From positions 6,882,001 through 6,946,000 of the forward strand of contig NC_135261.1 in NCBI RefSeq assembly GCF_964204865.1: 64,000 nt of DNA, in the 5' to 3' direction. Each line of letters starts with the position of its first letter. Position 1 is the first letter of the stretch. Both the position numbers and the translations under genes were made by a program. Under the pieces are notes generated by a model. It was not told where the DNA came from and did no database searches. It worked only from the letters and a program-made list of their open reading frames with translations. This document shows positions 35,501-62,495 of this stretch, piece after piece. Origin of the DNA: Styela clava. Taxonomy: Eukaryota.

Positions 35501-37907
35501 AAAAATTGTCTAATTCGTTTCTTTCAGTCTATGTGTACGAAATATATGTTATAAACTTTCAAAAAATGTAGGCATTTTTACTCAAAATGTTACCAAAACG
35601 CCGTAACAATTGTGTCGTCTGTAAATTAATGCTGCGATGAACACGTGCATATTAATGCCAGCTTTATTGATACCACCATTTCAATGGCCATTTTATTGAC
35701 TTTTTGACTATAGAAAATCACCATGACCATACTGTAGTAAACTGAAAGATTAAATAAGTTCACAAAAACTTGTATAACATGTGTTAACTAGTGTTTACAA
35801 ATGCCTTCATAATACATCTATTCTTCTTGATTGACAAAAAAATTAATTATTAAACAATCATATTTATACCGATTTCGAATTACGACGCCACCACACGGCC
35901 TTTTAAAAGGTCGACCTGGGCAAGCGACCGCTCGAGATTCGGGAAACGGTGGACAGTAACCGTATTCCCAAACTTTTTTCCTCAATCCCTATTTTTGTAA
36001 AATCTAAAATTATAGATATTCGCGACCTCACAACAAAAAGTTTCGTTCAGCAGTCCCAGGAATCAGTAAACGTATATCGTCATCCTGGGGAATATTTCAA
36101 CCCTGCCGTCGTCATTATTACTGTGTTGTTATTCTCGCATCCGACGTGTCGCTGTTTTATTTCTTACGTGTCGTCATTCTATCTTTCGAGTTTTCTGGCG
36201 CCCCTCTAAGCTTTGGGAGATGTTTAGGATGGCATTTCATATTGTAGCGTTTTCACTTGTGATTTTGGTTAGCAATTAGGTAGTTTCGTCCATAGCGTTT
36301 TTTTTTAACTCTATTTCGAATTGTTCGATATAACATATGATATTTGCATGTCTACAGCTCTTTATTATCAATCTGAAAATACAACCAAATACTTAAATCA
36401 AATCAACAGAACAGAAAGGACACAATGAAAATAACGAACGACAAGCATCACGAAGCAAGAAAAATAATATATACAAGAAAAATCCTGAAATCTGAGGACA
36501 GCCCTTGAAATCCGGTACATTCCAGCTAACCTCTGATCAGCCTACTGACTAGCATTAAAATATCTAAACGAGAATGGTCCAAAGTTGCTAGGTTGGCGGG
36601 CGCAATAACTTTTGAGGATGTCTCGCAGGCCGCAGTCGGAGAAAACCCAGAAGTCATCAAAACATCGCGTGTTTACTCACTTTAAATATATTTAGGAATC
36701 AGAGTTTACCACTCTGATTAGTTTTTTAAGGAAGTTATATAAAGCCTTCAGTTATTTTGAAATTGCTTCCCGAGTAATATCGTGGTATTTCCGGTATCTT
36801 TTCTCGTGTTTGGTTTTGTAATGTCGCTTAAAGTTATGTTATTTCGTGACAGATATTACTTGAAAACACACCAGACAGTGTGGTTTAACGTTGTTGTGGG
36901 TAAGGAAATACCTTTCCTCTCAGTTTACCTCGATCACTTTTTTTCTACACTCACTGTATGAAGAATTGTCATATTTGAAAAAATGTATTACGTGTAGCGT
37001 GAGCAGGCCTAGTGCTGCCGTCAAAGAACAACCAAGTCTGTTTAAGTTCGGACCCAGTTATAAAAAAAAAATGGATCGCGCGGCGCTAAATCAACAGTGC
37101 GGTTCGTGACTGCGGTCGCATGGCCAACGCTTGAAAATAGAGAAGTATTTTGGCTAAAATAAAGGCACAAAACGTCTCTTCAAATGAGGAGTTACTTGAC
37201 GCAAGCTCATCTCATCGGCTTGGTCTTGTCTGCACAAAACAATTCATTCTCCTTGTACCGATCACAGGACGTCATTCACATATTGGCACCGTCTTGACGT
37301 TTATAGATACAACATTGAAATTCCGTTATTTTAACAAACATCAATTCCGACATCGGGATTTGGAAAAGAACCATTTCCAGTTGAAATAGTATGAACCCCG
37401 GTTAATTAATTGATGCATGAAGACAATAGAAAGTGTCGCGGACTATAGCGTTCGCGTTTATATTGTTTGTATATTTAACAGATAACATTACTAAAGAACT
37501 GAAAACACGACCGGCCGCCAGCGCAGCGACTGGAGAAAAGAGATCGAAAGACAGTTTTTTTCTCTCACGTGTAGTTAGTGGTCAGAGTCCAGATCCGACG
37601 AAACAGCATTGAATAAGGTTCAACATAACAGTTTATGAACATAAAAATATGAATATACAAAAAATATAATCGAGGACGATATGGTCCGCAACAGAGCCCT
37701 TTCCTTGTTCAGAGCAGAGCAGCCCCGGCTATAATTCAAAGCAAAATTTCCGTTTCTGGAGCTTGATACCCCCAACCCTATTTCTTCCCATGTTACAGGA
37801 TTTGCTGTACATGTAGTATTTTTTCAAAGAAAAAATTGATCAACATTTACATGCAGAATGCAAAAAATTTTCTTCAGCTTTTCTCATGTCGTGGATATCT
37901 CAAGCGG

Positions 37908-37976
37908 TTAGACGTTTGACACGAAGCCCCATTCGAACATTATGTTTTTCTTTCGGCATTCACATCCGCAAGGAGT
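37908..37976 (-). pseudogene. Orphan last exon of an inverted, 5'-deleted duplicate of the 41434-44531 gene
   Basis: Encodes TPCGCECRKKNIMFEWGFVSNV*, identical to 44463-44531, behind an intact TTTCAG acceptor. Flanking intron and 3' UTR are also duplicated. No copy of exons 1-4 remains. Confidence 0.85.
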
Positions 37977-40900
37977 CTGAAATTTGAAAGATAAGATACC
38001 TTTAAGAACTTTCATTTACGATATAAATATCACGATATTTCTTACCATCAGATTACTTTTTATTCTTGATGAATTCATTGTAAAGTCTTTGATATTTCTT
38101 AATCAACATTTCAATCAAGTAAACCGTTTTGTCACCTCTAGTATTGTGTTATATTGAGTCACGTGGGACCCTATAGTTTCACCCAGGATTTTGCTATTGT
38201 CCAAAATATTGTGCTTTTATTTTTTCAAAATGCTGAAACTTGAAACTAATACTGCTAATTGAGCAACGAGAATCTAGAATTAGATATTACATCAGGCCAA
38301 CCCGTAATATTGACGACAAAGCCTATGCTCTGTTACGGCTTTAGAGGTGTACATGTTTGAATTGCAATGGGACTTGATTTGTGATTTTTATTTTAAAGTT
38401 TTTGCACGATAAGATAATGGATTTTCGTGTAAATACCCTACCATACCGCTTTGTGTACATATTTGAATAGGATAGGTTTGGATTTATATATTTATTCGAG
38501 GGAAAGGGAAATGGCAACACAGTGTAATCATACGGCGCCAGTTATATGTTTCAGGCTTCGGTTCAGGCTTCGCCACTCTCATCAGGTTTCGATTCTCATA
38601 TATGCATCCCTGCACAGATTCACACTTTAAATGCATTATAACATTTTTTAAACCTTCCGTTCATCGGTACGCTTTACAAAATATAGATCGCTCGTTTACC
38701 CCCAAAATTGCGTGTTGTGATTGGACAAAATAAGTTGTGTAAAATTCGAAAGTGAACTTGGTAGTTAGTGTAGTTGTAGTTAAAGCTTGGGATGAAAATG
38801 TGACTTCCTGAGAAGTTCTTCAAACTATTATCACCAGGCGATAATTTTTTTAGGGCGGTTATGGAGTGAATATCCGTATACCTAATGTACCTCTTGAAAA
38901 GTGGAAGTGTACCACTGGAGGTACATGTACCCTAGTTTGGGAACCCTTGCTTTAAAAAGTCAATCTAGTAACGATTTGAACCATTTAGTATTCGTGGAAT
39001 AAGAATTTACGATTATGTGTTTTGATTCTCTCGACGATAATTCTGACTCATATCCCTCGAACCATCTGCATGAACCATCTAAATTTCGTATGAAATCTGA
39101 TATTTCGTCCAAGATTTCGCTGTAATATTTTATCCATGGGAACACTGGCTGTCTGGTTTGATTCTTGCTACGCAAAACTCGGAATTTTTCTGAGGGTAGC
39201 GGTAGCGTCAAAGACTGCTTCGCTCTGTGTAATGTGTTCATATATTTGAGCATTGCTTTGTTGTAAATGTAATTGTAATTTGATAATTTTTGCCCGGAGT
39301 AATTGTGATGTAATTGAAAAATTTAAGAGAGTAATTGTAATGGTAATTGTAATTGAACTGAATTACTGTAATTGATCCAACTCTGCATCGAGTATTCAAT
39401 GAAGCTTCAAAAATCATTTTGAATAATCTTTTCTTAACATTTAATTAATATATATTTATTGTTTAATATATAACAATTCTAACAAGGTTTGATTTCTTAT
39501 AATTTTTTATATCTCTTCATAGGCTGTTTGATTTTCTAAATTATGAATTCTCTATTTTGTATTTGTAAAGTTAAGATATAATTATACCATTTTGAGATTT
39601 TTTTCTTTCTCGTGCGAAGGAACTGATTTAAAATGTATAAACAGACGAATATTTCACAAATTCTGGGTCAGACAGAGTTCAGAGTAAAATGCGAATTTCT
39701 ACTTAAAAACAAGTATCCAGAACTGAATACAAATGTTTTTTGCGGTGATTTTCCCTTGGGCTATAACAAGAATTTTCCAACATTTCTCACTTTTAGATGA
39801 TTTGAAGTTTTACCGCGTATTGACCGTATAAATGGATAACGATTGTTTATCACATCTGTCAAAATACAATCAAGATCAAAGTATATCTCGTGCATTCTGA
39901 CACAATAATGCCTAAAAAAAGTTATTTTTACTAAATACTTTAAATAAAACCTAAAAGAGTCGACATCTGGTTTTGAACTTGTGAGGCACGAAGTCTCACA
40001 GAAAAGTCATTAGTAGCAATAAATCACATTTATCAAAATTTGAATTAGACAATGCGACTTTTCACTGAAGAATGACTTTCAATGGCGCATGAAAGCGCAA
40101 TAAGTCAATGAAGAATGGAAAATATAGAATATTTTAACTAGCTTACATCACATTCTTATACTTATTCTTTGTGACAGCAAAGCCGATAAGATGGCTTGAT
40201 TGCAGTCTTCTTCTCCTTCTACTAGTCCATGTCGGCAATAAAAATGATTGACCAAATTATTTTTGTCAGATTTCATGCAAATCTGATATAGATGGTTCGA
40301 CGGATATGAGTCAGAATTATCGTCGAGACGATCAAAACGCATAATCGTAAATTCTTATTCCACGAATACTAAATGGTTTAAATCGTTACTAGATTGACTT
40401 TTTGAAGCAAGGGTTCTCAAACTAGGGTACATGTACCTCCAGTGGTACATTTCGACTTTTCGAAAGGTACATTAGGTATACGGATATTCTCGCCATAACC
40501 GCCCTAGAAAAATTTATCGCCTGGTGATAATACTTTGAAAAACTTTTCAAGAAGTCACATTTTCACCCCAAGCTTCAACTACAACTACACTAACTACCAA
40601 ATTTACTTTCGAATTTTACGCAACTTATTTTGTCCAATCACAGCACGCAATTTTGGGGGTAAATGAGAGATTTATATTTTGTAAAGCGTATCGATGAACG
40701 GAAGGTTAAGAAAATGTTATAAAGCATTTGAAGTGTGGATCTGTGCAGGGGTGCATATATGAGAATCGAAACCTGATGAGAGTGGCGAAGCCTGAACCGA
40801 GACCTTGGCATGAAATTTTTTGAAAGGTCTTGAAGTTTTCATCACGCAAAATAGATTCCGAGATGTTGTTTTGGTTAACCGTGCCACAGCAGTTGCTCGG

Positions 40901-41433
40901 GCATCGGAATTAATGGAATAAAGTATAAACAGTTATCGAGAATTACCTCGACCTATTGTCACTCTTCGAGTACTTCGGGTTACTTCGTTGATGTTGCACG
41001 CAATCTTTGGAAAGTGAGTCATGATTTCTGACAATGCCCAGAAAGGTTTTCGGTAATTGTATAGTTGCACGTCTATAGCTGTAAACATTTTATCTTTTTA
41101 TCATTTTTCTGGTTATCCTGTGTATTTAGTGAATTAAAATCTACATTTCTGCATATATTTAATCGTATCAACGATTATAGTGGTTTGGTAGTCAGTATAA
41201 GACATTCCACGAAATACTCGAATGTGCAAAAACAAGAACTAGAATTTCGAACCGCAATACTTGTTTGCTCCTCTGATTGGCTAACGATAAAATGGCACGT
41301 CTGTATACTTATACTATATAAATGAGAAGCCAATGATCTACATCCTTATGAAGCTGCAACACGGAGAAGTGAATTGTCCATACATTTGCGATTTTTGTTC
41401 AAGAAAGGAAAGAAACTTCGAATCACAATCGAG

Positions 41434-44400
41434 ATGAAGATATTGTTGCTATCTCTTTTGTTTTGTCAGTTCGTATATGGATTCGCTCGAAAAGAGTTCA
41501 ATTCGATGGAATTCAAGGCAATGTTTGACAAAAAGGTATAAGTTGAAATAACAAAGTTTGAAATAATTACAGAGTTTCATCGTGCACGAATCGATACCAA
41601 AAAATTCTAGTTTTCTACTAATTTTCTGTTTGAAAATCTATAGACATTTTCATGTGTCTCAAAAATGTCGTGCCCCGTTCTCCAATTGGTCCATTTTGTC
41701 TTGTTTCCATTTTTGACTAGCTCCAATTTTACACTTATTGGTTTCCAAAATTATTCAGCTTCAACTTTCCATTTATAAATAAATACCTTAACATATTTAC
41801 TATAAAATTTTAAATTGCTTTGTTAAAATTTCAATCATATTTTTTCAGGTGAACGAAGAAGAAATCAATAAGTTTACTTTTCCGGAAGAGGATGGATATG
41901 TTGCCGGAAAACACAATTCTTGTGGCAGACTCAAGTAATGAAAATTTAATCATTTATTTTTAAACAACCTTTAATTTGAATCACTTATATGGAGCGTATT
42001 GCTTTAAACTGGCGCACTCTTATTAGAATTTTATATTCTACTGACTACAAAGTTCATTAACTTATGAAGAGTATATTTAATCAATTTCATCTGAATAATT
42101 GTATTGGGATTGTATATGAAAGGTAGCTGAACGTATCTTGACAAGACAAAATCAAATCAACATTAATAAACGGAAAAATTCGTTCCTGTATTGTGTGCGT
42201 TGTTTCCACAAATCAACGAACAAATTGATTATTGCACCGCCATTTTGTTTTGTGTATTGATAACTACTATTATGGCGTTTATACACCACGTTCTTTTTTA
42301 GGCTTTTCTCGGGCCCTGAGGACAGATGCTTCGCAAGTAAAGGCGATACATCAGGATCTCCAAACGCTTGTGATGACCAAAAATGCACACAGAAATCTGT
42401 TTACGGCTCAACCAAATGCAGATCCCACGTCAGGCTACGCCAGCCTTACAGACACACTGGTTTAGAGTGCACGTAAGTACATGATATCGTTATGAAAATA
42501 AAAAATTAATATTTTTAGAAGTAAGCAATAGTATTAAGTAGCGATGTAAGTTTAGGATATTTTGTTTCCGAATCAGAATGTTTTGATTCGAATAATTCCG
42601 AATCTGATTCTATTTAGTGCAATTCCATATTGTTATTAATTTTATTCAAATTTGGAATGCCTACAAGCTAAATTATCATTAAATGATATTAATTCAATGG
42701 AAAACATACAAGGTTGAGAGAAACAATACATTCAATGGATGCATCAAATACCCAAGTTTTAAAATTACATTCTAGTAGTAGGATTTTCATTTCTTTCCTT
42801 GAGGAGTGGAATGCCGATAAGACCATGTTACAGTCCATGTCGGGCATGGGATTAGGTCACTAGTTATTTGTTTTGGATGCATAGACCTGATTTCCGACCG
42901 CCGATTGAATCACTCTATGAGGGCGAGGAGTCCAGCAATCGTTTTGTACAGAATTTTCAACGGGAATCGAACCTGCTGATCCTGTAGGGTGACCAGAAGT
43001 GCAGTGACAAGTGTGTTTCAATGTTATCTATGCTCGATGCACCAACCGCCAATCCACAAGTATACTCAGACATGAATGACAATTAATTACGATTTACCAG
43101 TGAAAATTACCCAATTCAACAAAATGCATGAGAACCTACAGCTAAAAAAATTCCATGAATGAATCTTGGCAGCATATAAAAAAAAAACGAAAGCTATCGT
43201 AATAACAGTATAGAAAAAGCAAGTCCATCCCTCTTCTATTGGGAATATTTTGTAACATTGTTTACTCTATACCGTTTATTATATTTAGTGTAGGCTAATC
43301 TGCCGAAAACTATAAAATTAATGTTCAAAGAGCAATAATTCATTGTTAAATTCATCACACACTGATGTGATTTTTACGTTCAGGTTTCACCAGAAAGCTT
43401 GTGAAAACCAGCATGATAATCGTGAAATGTATCCGGAGCCGGAAGAAGAAACTAAGGAGCGACACATGTATCCAGCCCCGGAGCCTGGCGATGCAAAAAG
43501 CATTGGTCCGAGACCCTGCCTCTGTCAAACCATTTGGTGCATGAATGACATATACACGATTTACGAGAAGGACGGTGATTGTTACAAGGGCAATGTTACT
43601 ATCAAGGTTAGTAAGCTGTGTAGTGTACTTCACATATATTGTGTGATGACTTCAAATGAGATAAAAAAAAAATATCTTTTACAACAATTTAACATAATGT
43701 TTGAACGTACATTTTAATATTAAATTAAATTGTGTAAACGAGAGAGAACTGCACAAATTCTTATGTGTGTGAAGATTGCAGGACTCTTCGTCGTCGTGAG
43801 GGGGTGTACGTAATCGCTGGTCGGTTGTGGATTCCTCCGCCATCAAGTCTATGAATCTAAAACAAATAACTGGCGCCATATAATTACACTGCGTTGTCAT
43901 TTCGCCCTACATCCGAATAAATATAAAAATCCAAACATATCCTATCCAAATGAAGACACAAAACAGAACTGCAGTGCCGGCATTTTACTTACACTAAAAC
44001 CCATTATCTTTTCGTGCGAAAAATTTCAAATCAGAATCACAAATCAACGTTTTACGTAATTGGGACCTGCAGATATATGTGCACCAAGATGGCGCACAAC
44101 CTGAACATAGTATGTGTACCAGGTTAGGGTTCATGTTGTGCGCCATCTTGGTGCACATACTTCGGGAGCGCCCTGAAATGGTGATTAAGAATTACCGAAG
44201 ACTTTACAATAAATTCATCAAGAACAAAAAGTAATCTGATGGTAAGAAAGATCGTGATATTTATATCGTAAATGAAAGTTCAGTCAGTCAGTAATCAGTA
44301 ATTTATTTTTTCACCATTCTAAAGCACACAATGTGAATACACAATACAAGAAATAGGAAATATGGTACTTTAGGGTGAAGGGAGGCGCGAGACACCAAGA

Positions 44401-44531
44401 CTGGTGATCGAGCAGCGACACCCATACGTTCTTACAAGTATATCTTATCTTTCAAATTTCAGACTCCTTGCGGATGTGAATGCCGAAAGAAAAACATCAT
44501 GTTCGAATGGGGCTTTGTGTCAAACGTCTAA
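41434..44531 (+). CDS. Uncharacterised secreted Cys-rich protein with a probable C-terminal cystine knot, 216 aa. Exons 41434-41535, 41849-41934, 42302-42472, 43384-43606, 44463-44531
   Basis: TATA (CTATATAAAT, about 41314), signal peptide MKILLLSLLFCQFVYG, five GT-AG exons totalling 651 nt in frame, 14 mature Cys ending in CLCQTIWC...TPCGCECR. Supported by the paralog at 60971-62453. Confidence 0.82.
44282..44427 (-). mobile_element. 3' end fragment of a LINE-like retroelement. Related pieces at about 56086-56230 (+) and 63190-63260 (-)
   Basis: Absent from the duplicated copy near 38005 and flanked by GTTC. Shares GGTGTCGC.GCTCGA...CTCGCGCCTCC, then AAATAAA and a short tandem tail. Confidence 0.55.
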
Positions 44532-45305
44532 CCGCATGAGATATCCACGACATGAAAAAAGCTAAAGAAAATTTTGTGCATTCTTCCTGTAAATGTTGAT
44601 CAATTTTTTCTTTGATTAGATGCTACATGTCCAGCAAATCTTGTAACACGGAAAGATATAGGGTTAGGGTTGTCAAGCTCTAAAAACGGTGATATTGCTG
44701 TGGATTATCGCTGGTAATATATTATTATGCTGGTACAAACGCTCACCATCGCCCTGGTATTTACCAATCTTTTGCTCAAACATGGTGGAGAATTAATCCA
44801 CTGATACAACGTCTCATTGCTTATGGTTATGTCTTTTTATTTCCCTCATGCTCATGCATCAATTATTTAACCGAGGTTTCTGATGTGCAAGCTGGACTAG
44901 TAACGGCACGAGGGACCGTGGTTCATTCCTATATTAAGTTGCCTTTAACGGCGTCGTTGACAATAAGCTGTCGAAATCTACAACCAAATATTATACATGT
45001 TGGTGCATTTCTGTGCAAATGCTATTTTATTAGATTATACTGCGGACCTTGTCTTAGGTCTTTAGGTTCGAAGAGGATTGCAATCTCGATATGTAGTCAG
45101 TGTATTTGAACTTTACTTTTTGCAGTGTTAAATATTTATTTATTTTAGACTCGATTATAGACAATCATGACACAATTGATGAATATACCCAAGTGCATGA
45201 TGGCTAAAATTGCCGATTTTGTCCACTTTTCATCAATAATTCTTCTAGTTGCGTCTAATTTTGTTTATCCATTTTCTAAAAGCCGTAGACAAATATATTA
45301 TAAAC

Positions 45306-58320: not shown

Positions 58321-61300
58321 TTATTGGACACGTTAGTGGACCTATGGATCGTTTCAATATTATGTTGTTGGACACGTAGTGGACATAACGATCGTTTCCA
58401 TATTATGTTGTTGTTGTTGTTGTTCTTGTTCTTTGACACGTTTTTAAAAAGTCGCTTTTCTCTTCGAATACTGGACCAATTGCTTTGAAATTCTCAGTGG
58501 TTAAAGATAAAAATTTTCTCCAGAAGGCTATTACTTTTTTTTTCGCTATGACGTCATCAAAATTATGTGACTCTACGTGTCCATATATTTGAGCATTGCA
58601 CTCTTGTTGTTCTTTGACATTATTTGGACACCTAGTGGAAAATTTAAAAATTCGCTTTGTCTCTGATTACTGGACTAATTTCTTTGAAATTTTTAGTGGT
58701 CAAAGATGGAATTTTTCTCCAGAAGGCTATTACTTTTATTTATTTCAAATATTTCTGTTAGCTCTGTGAGATTTGCTTTTGTTTGCTATGACGTCACCGA
58801 ACGTTCTGCGGACGCATATGCTGGCACTCCTCTTCATGTTCTTTCGATCACGTGCCATCGAACGTCGGTGGTTCGTAACGGAATCCTTGCTTTGCTAAGA
58901 TTTGAGGAATGGTGAATAGCGAATAGCGCCGTACTTGGTGTTACGTATATTACAGCAGTGTCTCGGATCGTTGGTATTACTACAGTTGTGAGTCGGACCA
59001 TCTTGCAATTTCAATTCACGCTGTCACAAGACAGTAACTGCTAAAGACAGGGCAGTTCCAGTACCGTAACACAGCACAGTGACACTGGACTAACTCGTAT
59101 CTGTCTGGTAAAAGCGGGGCTTGTATTTTAAATTTTGTTCCAATAATGAAGAAGGAAATGAAACGGATTACTTAGTATTTCAATTCATGTTGCAATTGAA
59201 TATAGAAAATAGATTCATTTACACGGGACATGTGAAGTGGGAGGCAGACAACTCGACTACAGACGGACAACTCGACTACAGACAGGCCTGGTGAGTTGTC
59301 TGTGTAGTCGAATTGTCCATCAGCCCTAAACGTTTATGACAGTCACTGTACCGAAACTTGTACCCTGATTCAGGTGGTGTTAAGTTGACGCATGTTATTT
59401 TGTAACGTTTTTATGTGAAATGTTCGACTGTGGTTCGGTACCTGATCCGGTAATACGGTAAATAATTGACTCATATCACGAGATATTTCAATTGATGTTT
59501 CAATATATTTGAGAATAATGGAACATTGTCACAGGACGTAAAATATCTATGACAGTCCCTGTACCGTCACAGTACTCCGATACAGGTACTGGTAAGTCAC
59601 CGCATATGATTTTTGGGGAATTGTTGTGCGTGTCCATATATTTGAGCATTGCTCTCTTGTCATTAATTATATATTAGGAAAATGCACATTTATTGAAGAT
59701 CACAATGATCATGATTTTTTGATTATAATGCTTTGATTCATGGCGATAACGCAAGATAGAAAGGTCAATCCCTGACATATAATACTATATATATACTCTA
59801 AATATGTATTTTTAGATTTGCAAACGTCTTGCTGCATTAACATTCGTCCTTGTTGTTGTTACTAAAACGAAATCGTTGCACCAATCGAATATAAATTTAC
59901 AGTAGCCTACCTAATAACGGCTAAAGCCGCTAAATGACACTTTTTATTCCAATGCTCGTCCGCCAATATTGCAGCAAATCAAACTCAGTGTTCTAAAGCC
60001 TCTTTGTAACGTTACCGATACAAGACCATCTTAGTCCTACCGCTGCCTAATGAATTGCTGCGGTGGTGGCACCTGATTTGCCATTTGCATTCCGATCTTT
60101 TCATGAGGGGGTTTCCGACTTTAGTGTAGGTCGCCTGTGTTACCGGTAGGCTACTTCGGTTAGTCACTGAATCGTCGTGTTCATATATTGGAACCTTGTT
60201 AGACATGAAGTGTATATATGGACCCTCTTGTTATTATGTTGTTGTTGTTGTTGTTAGTCATTCTCTTCTCTTTATCGTTTTAAAAAATCTTCCTTCCCAT
60301 TTACTGGAACAATTGCTTTGACGTTCTCAGTGGTTAACCCGCTTATCTCTCTCCACCTGGGTCCACGGTAGCCTACTGTAACGGATTGCATACCCGTACT
60401 ACTTCGTGCCCATATATTTGAGCATCGCTCTCTTTTCCAGGTGAAATCTTTTGTAAACAATCACCACATTCGATCATCATCCAAAAAGTTTCGTTGTTTT
60501 TTTTGAGATTTCTAGGGGCCAAAGTACTCTTCAATACATTAGAATAAAATTTTGGCACAATTTGACTTCTGAGATTGAAAAATAGATAAAAAATTTCAAA
60601 ATCCAGTTACGCAATAACATCTTTATGTTCATAATACACATTGCCCATCTATTTCAAACTTGTTTATGGATCCATTGTTTCATTAAGATGTATGTTACTT
60701 ACCTATTTATAACGCTACTGTAAAAACCACTTACTCTATAGTTGAAAAACATAATTCTGAAATTAAAAAAACTTGTTGATAATATTTCAATTTATTTGAA
60801 TGTCCAAGCTTAAGCAGTCAGAACAACATTGCACCAAATTAATATTTAAGCTAAGTCCTATGCGAATAGCCTCGAAGAGTCATATTGAATTCATGGTGTT
60901 TTTGTTTTATAACAATTTTCAAGTTTATCTGTATATTTGATCTGCATATAGTAATGTCGGTTGATAACATTTAGCCAACAGTAGACCAATTTTCCATCTT
61001 TCGAAACGGCATTCTGCATTCACACTTGCAAGGTGTCTGTAATGTAGAAAACATAAGAGATTATTGGACACGAAGTGGACATAACGATCGTTTCAATATT
61101 ATGTTGTTGTTGTTGTTGTTCTTGTTCTTTGACACGTTTTTAAAAAGTCGCTTTTCTCTTCGAATACTGGACCAATTGCTTTGAAATTTTCAGTGGTTAA
61201 AGATTAATTTTTTCGCTAGAAGGCTATTACTTTTATTTATTTCAAAATTTTGCGTGAATTCTATGAAATTTGATATTTCGTTAAGAGATTATTGGACACG

Positions 61301-62495
61301 AAGTGGACATAACGATCGTTTCAATATTATGTTGTTGTTGTTGTTCTTGTTCTTTGACACGTTTTTAAAAAGTCGCTTTTCTCTTCGAATACTGGACCAA
61401 TTGCTTTGGAATTTTCAGTGGTTAAAGATTAATTTTTTCGCTAGAAGGCTATTACTTTTATTTATTTCAAAATTTTGCGTGAATTCTATGAAATTTGATA
61501 TTTTGTCTAAAATTTTGCTGTATTATTTTTTATCCATGGGAACACGGATTTTAGTCAGTGTCATGGCTGGCTGTACGTCTTGATTCTGCAAAATTCTTGC
61601 TACTGGAAATTCAGAACTTTTTCGAGGGTACCGGTAGCGTCAAATGTACCGGTAAGGACTGATTCGCTCTGGTCTAACGTGTCCATATATTTGTGCGTAG
61701 CTCTCTTGTATTATATTTAATACTAATTCAAATGTTCCTATGAATAGCTGTGACAGAAAAAGAGCAGACGAAAATATTTCGCAATCAAAAGAAAATAATT
61801 TCAGAAAATTTTAGTCCCCAATCATCAATAAAGATATTTCTAATATGCATCCTAATATTATGATAATTCAAATATTTAGATAATTTCATAGTAGCTAAAA
61901 TACAAAGACTAACAAAACAGCAAACGTTTATTTAAATTTGGAGTAAAAAATTTACCAGTGAGGATCGTGAAGTCGGAAAACAATACACGATACAAAGGTC
62001 ACATGTGCAGGGAGATGTAGCGAGATCGTCCCAAAACATATAAGACCAAAGTTGGATTCTAATATCTAATAATTGCAGTGCCACTGGAAAAAAAAAAAAT
62101 CCATTCACAATTTTGGAATTTAGAAGTTGAAATCGCAGTAAAATTAATTGTAGTCCACGTTTTTCTCAGTACGAATATGAAAGTCGCTGTCCGTGTTTAA
62201 GGGATCGGAATCTAGTGCCGAAGGTCCGAATAAACAGTCACATAGAGAATTATTTAATTATCTCACCTTAACAGTAATATTTCCTTTGTACAGTTTTCCA
62301 CCTTCTTCGTAGATTGTCCAGATGTTTCCAAGGCACCAGATAGTCTGGCATTCACATTCTTTATCATCGGTATCGTGTGGGTGAAAACTGGAAAACGTGT
62401 CAACATGTCGTTGATATTCATTTTCACTTTCGCCACAAGGAATATTTGGAAATCTATTAAAAACACGAAAGAGCAATGCTCAAATATAAGGACAC
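58321..62495. mobile_element. Cluster of Helentron-associated (HINE-like) elements at about 58321-58608, 58620-59660, 60220-60435, 61061-61709 and a minus-strand end at 62469-62495. Further ends near 35277 and 39233
   Basis: 5' TTATTGGACACG and 3' CGTGTCCATATATTTGAGCATTGCTCTCTTGT (subterminal inverted repeat plus GAGCATTGCTC hairpin), (GTT)n microsatellite, shared core, no TSD. Confidence 0.65.
60971..62453 (-). CDS. Last two exons (62453-62267, 61036-60971) of a paralog of the secreted cystine-knot-like gene; 5' exons not resolved
   Basis: FPNIPC...CECQTIWCLGNIWTIYEEGGKLYKGNITVK|TPCKCECRMPFRKMENWSTVG*, with the same intron positions and phases as 43384-44531. Confidence 0.8.

What the first reader, a model, noticed from the sequence alone, without database searches (positions are those of the whole stretch)
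41434..44531. Unassigned family of secreted cystine-knot-like proteins, possibly Spaetzle/IL-17/neurotrophin-fold ligands
Seen: a signal peptide, a pro-region-like N-terminus, and a C-terminal pattern C...C...CxCQTIWC-x22-TPCxCECR shared with the paralog at 60971-62453. The loop before CxC is variable and holds an internal repeat here (REMYPEPEE/RHMYPAPEP). Known: a CxQ-type strand, a beta-hairpin and a terminal CxC are the layout of growth-factor cystine knots such as Spaetzle, neurotrophins, IL-17 and PTTH/Trunk. Inference: a lineage-specific cytokine family in birth-and-death evolution, with three loci in 25 kb. The ORF track misses it because the exons are short.
Basis: partly seen in the sequence, partly recalled or inferred. 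Interest (0 to 1): 0.78.

Follow-up and report, generated by a model that had tools for sequence, protein, structure and literature searches.

The report
Sea-squirt NGF/Spätzle-fold secreted protein gene
This is a real, spliced gene of the sea squirt Styela clava for a small secreted cysteine-rich protein, one of about 48 related genes found only in this species so far, that no sequence method can name but that is predicted to fold like nerve growth factor, Spätzle and horseshoe-crab coagulogen.

Summary
Positions 41434-44531 (+) are a five-exon GT-AG gene that matches RefSeq LOC120329502 of Styela clava (216 aa). Contigs of three runs guessed to be RNA carry introns 2-4 spliced out exactly as modelled.

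The motif CxCQTIWC-x22-TPCxCECR, the MYPxPE repeat, the minus-strand paralog and an orphan exon-5 copy are all present.

The family is much larger than three loci. About 48 exon-4 and 47 exon-3 matches lie on seven contigs, some with stop codons. All 11 hits among 1.84 billion representative proteins are S. clava.

Pfam and PDB sequence searches find nothing, and a profile comparison with Styela's own IL-17 genes is insignificant.

An AlphaFold model (pLDDT 77) has two long beta-hairpins. Of 48,161 PDB chains, 35 reach Z>=2 and 33 of them are cystine-knot growth factors or antagonists. NGF (Z 5.1-5.6) and coagulogen (4.8-5.0) are best.

Not shown: the knot's disulfide connectivity (no coordinates were given), any cytokine function, and a cleavable pro-region. 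The N-terminal segment looks like part of the fold.

The scan met this family before on other DNA of this genome (s1-819790, s1-817510).

The parts
41434..41535 (+). Exon 1: start codon, signal-peptide-like hydrophobic N-terminus, first 34 codons (phase 0 donor)
   Evidence: The same junction is in the RefSeq protein P0001. 23 paralog exon-1 peptides begin M-[KR] followed by a hydrophobic run. Intron 1 was not covered by contigs.
41849..41934 (+). Exon 2: conserved N-terminal segment (KF.FP motif, Cys59)
   Evidence: The joint 41934|42302 is seen in X1. Residues 31-60 are modelled at pLDDT 92-95.
42302..42472 (+). Exon 3: Cys72, Cys86, Cys91, Cys102, Cys119; first beta-hairpin (strands 88-99 and 105-119)
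   Evidence: The joint 42472|43384 is seen in X1 and X2.
43384..43606 (+). Exon 4: Cys126, variable loop, CLCQTIWC, most of the second beta-hairpin (strands 165-182 and 185-203), and Cys186, which is unique to this gene
   Evidence: The joint 43606|44463 is seen in X3.
43403..43516 (+). Coding stretch for the variable acidic Tyr/Pro-rich loop (residues 127-164), with the REMYPEPEE / RHMYPAPEP repeat
   Evidence: The model has pLDDT 54-57 here. Paralogs carry 1-4 LYPEP-type units. Tandem 33-nt and 18-nt units occur in L028; none is detected here.
44463..44531 (+). Exon 5: TPCGCECR (Cys197, 199, 201), C-terminal tail and stop codon
   Evidence: 25 paralog exon-5 peptides share [TIS]PC.C[DE]C.
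44060..44180 (.). Palindromic high-copy element (MITE-like) inside intron 4; not part of the protein
   Evidence: Depth of 7,000-84,000 in bins 44036-44263. 1241 first-look candidates in the genome; the 40 scored places match at 92-100% identity on one strand (the window's own copy among them), each palindrome also matching the other strand at 80-86% (80 rows). Only sub-threshold miRNA-like Rfam matches.
37908..37976 (-). Orphan inverted copy of exon 5 with its stop codon (22 of 22 residues identical), inside inverted repeat arms 37725-37998 / 44441-44714
   Evidence: No exon 1-4 homologues lie beside it.
62267..62453 (-). Paralog (LOC120329504) exon 4, long form. RefSeq isoform X2 (P0005) uses an internal acceptor that skips the Cys126 equivalent
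60971..61036 (-). Paralog exon 5 (TPCKCECRMPFRKMENWSTVG, then stop)
   Evidence: It matches the C-terminus of P0005.

Best explanation
Shown: 41434-44531 is an expressed five-exon gene of Styela clava. It encodes a 216-aa protein with a signal-peptide-like N-terminus. It belongs to a family of about 48 tandemly clustered loci that share one five-exon structure and a framework of 13 cysteines.

Predicted: after signal-peptide removal the whole chain folds as one unit. An N-terminal helical segment packs on a growth-factor cystine-knot core made of two long beta-hairpins. The core is closest to neurotrophins and coagulogen.

Inferred: the protein is exported and acts outside the cell as a binding ligand, probably as a dimer like other proteins of this fold.
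- The two strongly conserved hairpins (dN/dS about 0.23) are the scaffold and a common contact surface.
- Specificity would lie in three variable parts: the acidic Tyr/Pro-rich loop between Cys126 and Cys165, which grows by tandem duplication of units of about 11 residues; the Cys72-Cys86 loop; and the C-terminal tail.
- Gene duplication, decay and partial copies diversify the repertoire.
- Its partner is unknown. Candidates are Toll-like, IL-17R-type or other ectodomains.
For: Gene and transcript.

Family size and shared exon structure: 48 of 60 matches at E<1e-3; 47 of 58, five of them with stops.

Restriction to S. clava: 11 hits at E<=1e-3 among 1,835,955,588 representatives. All are named S. 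clava.

Cysteine framework.

Fold:
- AlphaFold2 model: pLDDT 77.3, pTM 0.64, strands 88-99, 105-119, 165-182 and 185-203 at pLDDT 91-95.
- Foldseek's best rows are NGF, NT-3, coagulogen and BDNF, prob 0.98-1.00, but E is only 3e-3 to 1e-2.
- VIA-align: NT-3 Z 5.6 (rmsd 3.7, 93 aligned); coagulogen Z 5.0 (103 aligned, 18% identity, model residues 35-204); Spaetzle Z 4.6.
- In the Foldseek-independent search only 35 of 48,161 chains reach Z>=2. 33 of them are titled as cystine-knot growth factors or antagonists.
- ESM neighbours are Spaetzle, NGF, IL17 and Noggin clusters at 0.90-0.92.

Selection: over 34 codons of hairpin 2, median dN 0.28, dS 1.04, ratio 0.23 in 170 pairs, none above 1.

Loop growth by tandem units.

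16 of 25 exon-5 peptides end in Gly followed by 1-3 Lys/Arg. By general knowledge this is the usual signal for C-terminal trimming and amidation of secreted peptides.
Against: - No sequence method links the family to any described one. Pfam NGF, Spaetzle, IL17, Coagulin and Noggin models hit none of its loci.
- The structural scores are middling (best Z 5.6; no Foldseek E<=1e-3). The tool notes that Z under 8 can reflect only a common arrangement.
- There is only one model. It was built from an alignment of same-species paralogs and single-exon fragments.
- Disulfide connectivity, dimerisation, secretion, receptor and biological role were not tested.
- The tissue and condition of the runs with spliced contigs are unknown, their depth is low (2.6-5), and their RNA nature is the tool's guess.
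- This gene has an even 14 cysteines and lacks the Gly-basic C-terminal end.
Confidence: 0.6

Rival explanations
1. It is a coagulogen-like structural protein: a clottable or cross-linkable component of haemolymph or tunic. It would be stored in blood cells and polymerise after limited proteolysis or oxidative cross-linking of its Tyr/Pro-rich loop. It would not be a signalling ligand.
For: Coagulogen ties with NGF at the top (Z 4.8-5.0). It has the longest alignment (101-103 residues), the highest identity (18%) and is the only top match that also covers the N-terminal segment (model 35-204). As in coagulogen, there is no separate pro-domain. A basic residue four positions after Cys59 is kept in all ten aligned proteins (read by eye). 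The loop is rich in Tyr-Pro units. One family member is fused behind a multicopper oxidase.
Against: The Coagulin Pfam model hits no family locus. About 48 diverged paralogs with variable loops are unusual for a bulk structural protein. Contig depth is low in the runs seen. No cleavage or polymerisation was tested.
Confidence: 0.15
2. It is a very diverged true member of the IL-17 family: a full-knot 'T1A-like' type retained in a tunicate. It would signal through IL-17R/SEFIR receptors.
For: The layout C-x-C-x4-C ... C-x-C-x-C resembles Styela's own IL-17 motif CLCKGC ... GCTC. There is no pro-domain, as in IL-17. IL-17A and IL-25 are among the fold matches (Z 2.9-3.9). SEFIR-domain loci exist in the genome (7 places).
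Against: The IL17 Pfam model finds 32 loci over its cut-off in this genome, and none is a family locus. hhalign of the family against six Styela IL-17 domains gives probability 0.9% over 12 columns. Neurotrophins and coagulogen score higher than IL-17. Section 7 of PMC11087794 states that all tunicate IL-17s are the T2 type, lacking cysteines 1 and 4.
Confidence: 0.1
3. It is a secreted binding module or antagonist of the Noggin/DAN/sclerostin kind. It would trap another ligand or target a partner to the matrix instead of activating a receptor.
For: Noggin (Z 3.8, 93-105 aligned, covering model 33-203), NBL1, Gremlin and sclerostin are among the matches. Noggin also ends in C-x-C-x-C (recalled, not tested). 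A family member serves as the C-terminal domain of a multicopper oxidase model and has no signal-peptide exon of its own. That fits a binding module.
Against: Scores are lower than for NGF and coagulogen. The genome has one canonical Noggin gene elsewhere, and the Noggin model hits no family locus. No partner is known.
Confidence: 0.08
4. The knot-like fold is an artefact of prediction. The protein would be a cysteine-rich beta-hairpin protein of another, possibly new, fold, for instance a defence peptide or toxin, and the matches would reflect only long paired hairpins.
For: Best Z is 5.6 and no Foldseek E reaches 1e-3. The alignment behind the model is shallow, from a single species and partly built of fragments. 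The connectivity was not inspected. 13-14 cysteines is more than the six of a minimal knot.
Against: 33 of the 35 chains with Z>=2 out of 48,161 are cystine-knot proteins, which is very specific. An independent language-model search gives the same clan. The cysteines sit at the ends of the four strands, where the knot of NGF-type proteins lies.
Confidence: 0.07

Closest known systems
Neurotrophins (NGF, NT-3, BDNF, NT-4; Pfam PF00243)
   Same: Best structural matches: NT-3 3buk_A Z 5.6, rmsd 3.7, 93 aligned; NGF 1sg1_A Z 5.1-5.2. Both have two long twisted beta-hairpins with cysteines clustered at one end, and both are secreted. The cysteine order C ... C-x6-C ... C ... C-x-C is compatible with the NGF knot (inference).
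   Different: No sequence similarity. No conserved furin-type pro-domain site. 13-14 cysteines instead of 6. The N-terminal segment appears to be part of the fold. There is a long variable loop. There are about 48 genes. By a passage of PMC2772990, Ciona lacks neurotrophin, Trk and p75NTR.
Horseshoe-crab coagulogen (PDB 1aoc; Pfam PF02035 Coagulin)
   Same: Z 4.8-5.0 with the longest alignment (101-103 residues), 18% identity and coverage from the N-terminal segment to the last strand. Both have many extra disulfide-forming cysteines. Both have an N-terminal part that stays with the knot domain.
   Different: The Coagulin HMM hits no family locus. No evidence of clotting. The family is multigene with variable loops, and the lineage is different.
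Spaetzle (Pfam PF16077)
   Same: Fold match Z 3.7-4.6. The nearest language-model clusters carry Spaetzle. Most paralogs have an odd number of cysteines (13), which would allow a disulfide-linked dimer as in Spaetzle (inference).
   Different: No HMM match (the genome search's control also rang nowhere). No recognisable activation-cleavage site. Only 3 TIR places were found in the genome by an exon-wise search, which is a lower bound.
IL-17 family (Pfam PF06083), including Styela's own expansion of at least 32 loci
   Same: Secreted with no pro-domain. C-x-C ... C-x-C motifs on strands 3 and 4. Tandemly expanded in this genome.
   Different: hhalign probability 0.9%. The IL17 HMM hits none of the family loci. 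Lower structural scores (Z 2.9-3.9). By section 7 of PMC11087794, tunicate IL-17s lack cysteines 1 and 4, whereas this family keeps cysteines at all the expected knot positions.
PTTH/Trunk and Noggin
   Same: Fold matches: PTTH 5aoq_M Z 3.9; Noggin 7ag0_A Z 3.8.
   Different: Lower scores. One canonical Noggin gene lies elsewhere in the genome. PTTH and Trunk were not tested by sequence.

Membership tests
Cystine-knot growth-factor fold (structural superfamily) | Two pairs of long antiparallel beta-strands (two hairpins) joined at one end | tested here: met
   The model has strands 88-99/105-119 and 165-182/185-203 at pLDDT 91-95. 33 of 35 chains with Z>=2 among 48,161 are proteins of this fold.
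Cystine-knot growth-factor fold (structural superfamily) | Three disulfides (1-4, 2-5, 3-6) in which one passes through the ring made by the other two | not testable with these tools
Cysteine positions at the strand ends are compatible. Joint loss of Cys72 with Cys165 in P0007, and of Cys172 with Cys197 in P0003, hints at two extra pairs.
Neurotrophin (PF00243 NGF) | Match to the family's sequence model | tested here: not met
   0 Pfam hits for 10 of 10 members at E<=10. In the genome search the best NGF match is E 0.44, below the cut-off and not at a family locus.
Neurotrophin (PF00243 NGF) | Pro-domain removed at a conserved dibasic (furin-type) site before the knot domain | tested here: not met
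   No conserved R-x-[KR]-R or dibasic site between the signal peptide and Cys86 in the 10-protein alignment (read by eye). The segment carries conserved Cys59 and Cys72 and is modelled at pLDDT 92-95.
Neurotrophin (PF00243 NGF) | Binding to Trk or p75NTR receptors | not tested
   No receptor search or binding test was done. A passage of PMC2772990 says Ciona lacks the system.
Spaetzle (PF16077) | Match to the family's sequence model | tested here: not met
   Searches gave no hit. The genome search found none, but its control rang in no genome, so that search alone is weak.
Spaetzle (PF16077) | Protease-activated pro-form; disulfide-linked dimer that binds Toll | not testable with these tools
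   Most paralogs have 13 cysteines, an odd number, which is compatible with an intermolecular bond. No cleavage site is recognisable. 3 TIR places were found in the genome.
IL-17 (PF06083) | Match to the family's sequence model, or to this genome's own IL-17 genes | tested here: not met
   32 loci are over the cut-off in the genome, none at family loci. hhalign of A1 against A6 gives probability 0.9%, E 0.063, 12 columns.
Coagulogen (PF02035 Coagulin) | Match to the family's sequence model | tested here: not met
   The best genome match is E 0.25, not at a family locus. No Pfam hit for the proteins.
Coagulogen (PF02035 Coagulin) | NGF-like knot with an N-terminal chain that stays disulfide-linked, and a helical peptide excised on activation | tested here: inconclusive
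   The structural alignment covers model 35-204 against coagulogen 26-175, Z 4.8-5.0, 18% identity. Cleavage was not tested.
Noggin (PF05806) | Match to the family's sequence model | tested here: not met
   One canonical locus on contig C14 (E 1.3e-71); none at family loci.

The most novel reading that the evidence does not exclude
Tunicates did not lose the full-knot neurotrophin/Spaetzle-type ligand class. On this reading, the family descends, far diverged, from the ancestral three-disulfide ligand that gave rise to neurotrophins, Spaetzle, coagulogen and IL-17. In Styela it has been expanded to about 48 genes whose hypervariable Tyr/Pro-rich loops set specificity. It would signal through Toll-like or IL-17R-type receptors in immunity, wound response or self/non-self recognition.
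Probability: 0.15. Interest if true: 0.8.

Novelty: new variant of a known kind. Interest (0 to 1): 0.55.

Why it matters
[quoted passage not shown] A passage of PMC2772990 reports that Ciona lacks the neurotrophin/Trk/p75NTR system. Section 7 of PMC11087794 reports that tunicates keep only the incomplete-knot (T2) type of IL-17.

A large, transcribed, selectively constrained family with a predicted full NGF/coagulogen-type knot in Styela would show one of two things. Either this ligand class survived there in unrecognisable sequence form, or the fold was reinvented. Either way it supplies about 48 candidate extracellular ligands, with a built-in variable loop, for an animal whose immune and allorecognition signals are poorly known.

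It also shows that short-exon genes of this kind escape ORF-based scans and all sequence-family libraries.

The gene is already in RefSeq as an 'uncharacterized protein'. The fold assignment rests on one predicted model with middling scores. The finding is therefore a well-founded lead, not a demonstrated function.

Tried and rejected
Single-exon searches. Pfam on the five exon peptides gave only a sub-threshold CMC4 match on exon 3 (18.4 bits against a cut-off of 28.9). I took it as chance, because of the Cys spacing.

Protein word searches.
- With P0001 the search found only P0001 itself (1 of 47 candidates).
- With profile A1 it found 3 proteins of 626 candidates, all S. clava. It added nothing beyond.

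Paralog with a long open frame. I looked for a paralog with fused exons, so as to have a natural contiguous knot domain. L041's 200-aa frame is intron read-through, not a fusion.

Alignments for folding. A2 and A3 were rejected after inspection, because MAFFT misplaced short fragments: exon-5 peptides landed on the first CxC motif, and the heads of exon-4 peptides were misplaced. A4 was fixed to A5 by trimming three residues from the exon-3 fragments. A5 holds 58 rows: 11 database proteins, 22 exon-4 fragments and 25 exon-3 fragments. Exon-1, exon-2 and exon-5 fragments were left out.

Cysteine table. A script meant to tabulate cysteine presence for each locus had offset errors in its patterns. 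I do not use its table. Statements on cysteines rest, read by eye.

Other negative or unrelated results.
- TRF found no tandem repeat in this gene's loop.
- Rfam on 41300-44700 gave only two sub-threshold miRNA-like matches, both on the intron-4 palindrome.
- Tuphoxin (PMC9395347, outline and abstract only) is a tyrosinase-type oxidase and is unrelated. Rusticalin (PMC6339383) was seen only in a search listing.

Literature. No paper describing this family turned up in the searches (six LOC identifiers, 0 papers). The library lacks most subscription journals, and supplements were closed. Dataset S1 and Fig. S1 of PMC11087794 list the curated IL-17-related sequences, may include tunicate entries, and could bear on novelty. 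I did not see them.

Papers, and what I saw of each:
- PMC11087794: outline with abstract, sections 5 and 7 in full, and three passages.
- PMC2772990: one passage.
- PMC9395347: outline and abstract.
- All others: search listings only.

Not done:
- any search of other tunicate genomes or transcriptomes (no such collection is on hand);
- a dimer prediction;
- a signal-peptide predictor;
- RNA evidence for the paralog or for intron 1.
Full report
WHAT IS THERE. The window is AT-rich eukaryotic DNA (GC 0.29-0.40). Reading 41300-44700 and translating the five proposed exons gives this model on the + strand:
- exon 1, 41434-41535;
- exon 2, 41849-41934;
- exon 3, 42302-42472;
- exon 4, 43384-43606;
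- exon 5, 44463-44531.
Every intron is GT..AG, the phases are 0/2/2/0, and the product has 216 residues.

Instead I searched with the open frame around exon 4, scoring only the exon. This returned one database protein, P0001: 216 aa, 'uncharacterized protein LOC120329502', Styela clava, 100% identical over exon 4. Its sequence has the same four junctions. It differs from the window's exon translations at six residues, all in exons 1-3, which looks like allelic variation.

The organism is therefore the ascidian Styela clava. The window is G000:C16:6882001-6946000.

TRANSCRIPTION AND SPLICING. Four runs hold 6-12% of the stretch's words, as expected if they hold only exons. Their contigs, laid on 41300-44700, show three joints:
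- 41934|42302 in X1 (X2 shows it one base off);
- 42472|43384 in X1 and X2 (X3 one base off);
- 43606|44463 in X3.
Each skips a GT..AG interval exactly as modelled. One X1 contig of 435 nt runs through exons 3 and 4 without a gap.

Some limits apply. The runs are only guessed to be RNA. Depths are low (2.6-5). Intron 1 is not covered. One X3 contig reads through exon 2 into intron 2.

The X3 allele differs at 16 listed coding positions, 9 of them non-synonymous. None of the non-synonymous ones falls in the second hairpin.

- The motif CLCQTIWC, 22 residues, TPCGCECR is present.
- The paralog has CECQTIWC, 22 residues, TPCKCECR on the minus strand (62267-62453 and 60971-61036).
- The paralog's exon 3 lies just beyond the window's end. 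RefSeq isoform X2 of that gene (P0005) uses an internal acceptor.
- The third locus is an inverted copy of exon 5 with its flank (37908-37976; 22 of 22 residues identical; repeat arms 37725-37998 / 44441-44714 at 89% and 38006-38113 / 44174-44281 at 94%). No upstream exons accompany it.
- The REMYPEPEE / RHMYPAPEP repeat is real at the protein level.

THE FAMILY.
- The exon-4 peptide matches 60 places in the genome, 48 at E<1e-3, on seven contigs.
- The exon-3 peptide matches 58 places, 47 at E<1e-3, five of these with stop codons.
- A profile of ten database proteins run over 43 fetched loci finds the same five-exon layout everywhere, with breaks near profile positions 36, 64, 121 and 197.
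- Most genes lie in tandem clusters: C16 at 6.67-6.95, 7.62-7.80 and 9.33-9.53 Mb, C19 at 0.93-1.06 Mb, and others.

A framework of 13 cysteines is kept (P0001 numbering): 59, 72, 86, 91, 102, 119, 126, 165, 167, 172, 197, 199 and 201. The exceptions are informative:
- P0007 lacks Cys72 and Cys165 together.
- P0003 lacks Cys172 and Cys197 together.
- Cys172 alone is missing in P0004, L027 and L033.
- Cys102 is Trp in L013 and L018.
- Cys186 is unique to the window's gene, which gives it 14 cysteines.

The two hairpin regions are strongly conserved. Over 34 codons of hairpin 2, 170 paralog pairs give median dN 0.28, dS 1.04 and ratio 0.23, and none exceeds 1 (22 sequences; pairs with dS below 0.05 or not computable were dropped).

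The variable parts are the Cys72-Cys86 loop, the Cys126-Cys165 loop and the tail. The Cys126-Cys165 loop carries one to four [LM]YPxP units. In L028 it shows 33-nt and 18-nt tandem units at 95-97%, though none is detectable in this gene. 16 of 25 exon-5 peptides end in Gly followed by one to three Lys/Arg.

RANGE. phmmer of P0001 against 1,835,955,588 representative proteins gives 11 hits at E<=1e-3. All of them sit in clusters named Styela clava. This was a single-sequence search. Other stolidobranch ascidians may not be in the library, so 'Styela-only' means only that nothing else was found. A dS near 1 says the paralogs are old, so relatives in sister species are likely.

WHAT IT IS NOT, BY SEQUENCE.
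- Pfam: 0 families for P0001 and for all 10 members of A1, even at E<=10.
- PDB sequences: 0 hits for the protein and for the profile.
- Pfam models run over the whole genome:
  - Spaetzle: none, but the control also rang nowhere.
  - NGF: best E 0.44, elsewhere.
  - Coagulin: best E 0.25, elsewhere.
  - Noggin: one canonical gene on C14.
  - IL17: 32 loci over the cut-off, none at a family locus.
- hhalign of the family against six Styela IL-17 domains: probability 0.9% over 12 columns.

FOLD. AlphaFold2 was run on alignment A5, with P0001 as the first row. It gave pLDDT 77.3 and pTM 0.64. The model has:
- four long strands (88-99, 105-119, 165-182, 185-203) at pLDDT 91-95;
- an N-terminal segment (31-60) at pLDDT 92-95;
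- a poorly defined loop (131-160) at pLDDT 54-57.

Foldseek against the PDB has no hit at E<=1e-3. Its best rows are cobra NGF (E 3e-3), NT-3, coagulogen, NGF and BDNF/NT-4 at probability 0.98-1.00.

VIA-align on Foldseek's list:
- NT-3: Z 5.6, rmsd 3.7, 93 aligned;
- NGF: about Z 5.2;
- coagulogen: Z 5.0, 103 aligned, 18% identity, model residues 35-204;
- Spaetzle: Z 4.6;
- IL-17A: Z 3.9;
- Noggin: Z 3.8.

In the Foldseek-independent scan of 48,161 chains, only 35 reach Z>=2. By their titles and my knowledge of those proteins, 33 are cystine-knot growth factors or antagonists: NGF, coagulogen, PTTH, Noggin, Spaetzle, IL-17A, IL-25, NBL1, Gremlin, Norrin, sclerostin, GDNF, artemin, VEGF, PDGF, the TGF-beta family, glycoprotein hormones and VWF CTCK. 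One title is uninformative (6wio_C). One is unrelated, at Z 2.0 (8brp_A).

The scores are middling, but the list is almost pure. The ESM Atlas feature search independently gives Spaetzle, NGF, IL17 and Noggin clusters at 0.90-0.92.

N-TERMINUS. There is no conserved dibasic site between the signal peptide and the knot. Conserved Cys59 and Cys72 lie there, and the segment is confidently modelled. I read it as part of the mature protein, as in coagulogen or IL-17, and not as a pro-region.

HOW IT MOST LIKELY WORKS.
- Shown: the gene, its splicing, the family, the constraint on it, and its lineage restriction in the searched data.
- Predicted: a secreted protein with an NGF/coagulogen-type fold.
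- Inferred: an extracellular, probably dimeric, binding ligand. The conserved hairpins would form the scaffold and common interface. The tandem-unit loop, the Cys72-86 loop and the tail would give each paralog its specificity.

Candidate partners exist in the genome: 3 TIR places and 7 SEFIR places, both lower bounds. None was tested.

The rivals are a coagulogen-like clotting or matrix protein, a diverged true IL-17, a Noggin/DAN-like trap or targeting module, and a prediction artefact. Their evidence is set out in their own section.

KNOWN OR NEW. The gene is annotated in RefSeq, but only as uncharacterized. No paper on the family was found, and supplements were closed. The fold class is known. 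The family is a new sequence family within that class, in a lineage reported to lack neurotrophins (PMC2772990, one passage) and full-knot IL-17s (PMC11087794, section 7).

The scan had already met this family on two other stretches of this genome (s1-819790 and s1-817510). Its follow-up notes reach the same fold reading. My tests were run independently of them and agree.

Noticed in passing
window 44036-44263 (core about 44060-44180), inside intron 4: A palindromic element of about 113 bp. It has 1241 first-look candidates in the genome. Only 40 places were scored; they match at 92-100% identity on one strand (the window's own copy among them), and each palindrome also matches the other strand at 80-86% (80 rows). 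Contig depth is 7,000-84,000 in the four runs. It looks like a MITE. Rfam gives only sub-threshold miRNA-like matches (mir-784, 32 bits against a gathering score of 94)..
   Followed up: partly
window 38553-39067 and 40290-40805: A second, larger inverted repeat lies between the orphan exon-5 copy and the gene. Its arms are 298 nt and 225 nt at 92-94%, with about 1.2 kb between the inner arms. It may be a foldback element..
   Followed up: no
L041 (G000:C8:22733500-22738000), minus strand: A family member lies directly behind the last exons of a hephaestin-like multicopper oxidase. Its first exon has no start codon or signal peptide and begins after an acceptor. RefSeq models (P0006, 967 aa, 'ferroxidase HEPHL1-like') join the two in frame, so the knot domain appears to be recruited as the C-terminal domain of a secreted oxidase..
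   Followed up: partly
G000:C16:9497995-9510326: Six identical weak matches to the last 23 residues of exon 4, spaced 2452-2453 bp apart. This looks like a tandem array of a unit of about 2.45 kb that carries an exon-4 fragment..
   Followed up: no
G000: C3 at 14.84-14.87 and 2.19-2.23 Mb, C5 at 14.7-15.08 Mb, and others: Canonical IL-17 is itself expanded in this genome: 32 places are over the Pfam cut-off, mostly in tandem clusters. The motifs are CLCKGCI ... VGCTCV..
   Followed up: partly
exon-5 peptides of the paralogs (loci L002-L038): 16 of 25 C-terminal tails end in Gly followed by 1-3 Lys/Arg (for example GKK, GRR, GKR). By general knowledge this is the usual signal for carboxypeptidase trimming and C-terminal amidation of regulated-secretion peptides. 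The window's gene ends in VSNV and lacks it..
   Followed up: no
window 41434-44531, compared with P0001 and with X3 contigs: High allelic diversity. There are six amino-acid differences from the RefSeq protein. Another allele in run X3 shows 16 listed coding differences, 9 of them non-synonymous. All 9 lie outside the second hairpin, and four are in the variable loop..
   Followed up: partly
   Followed up: no
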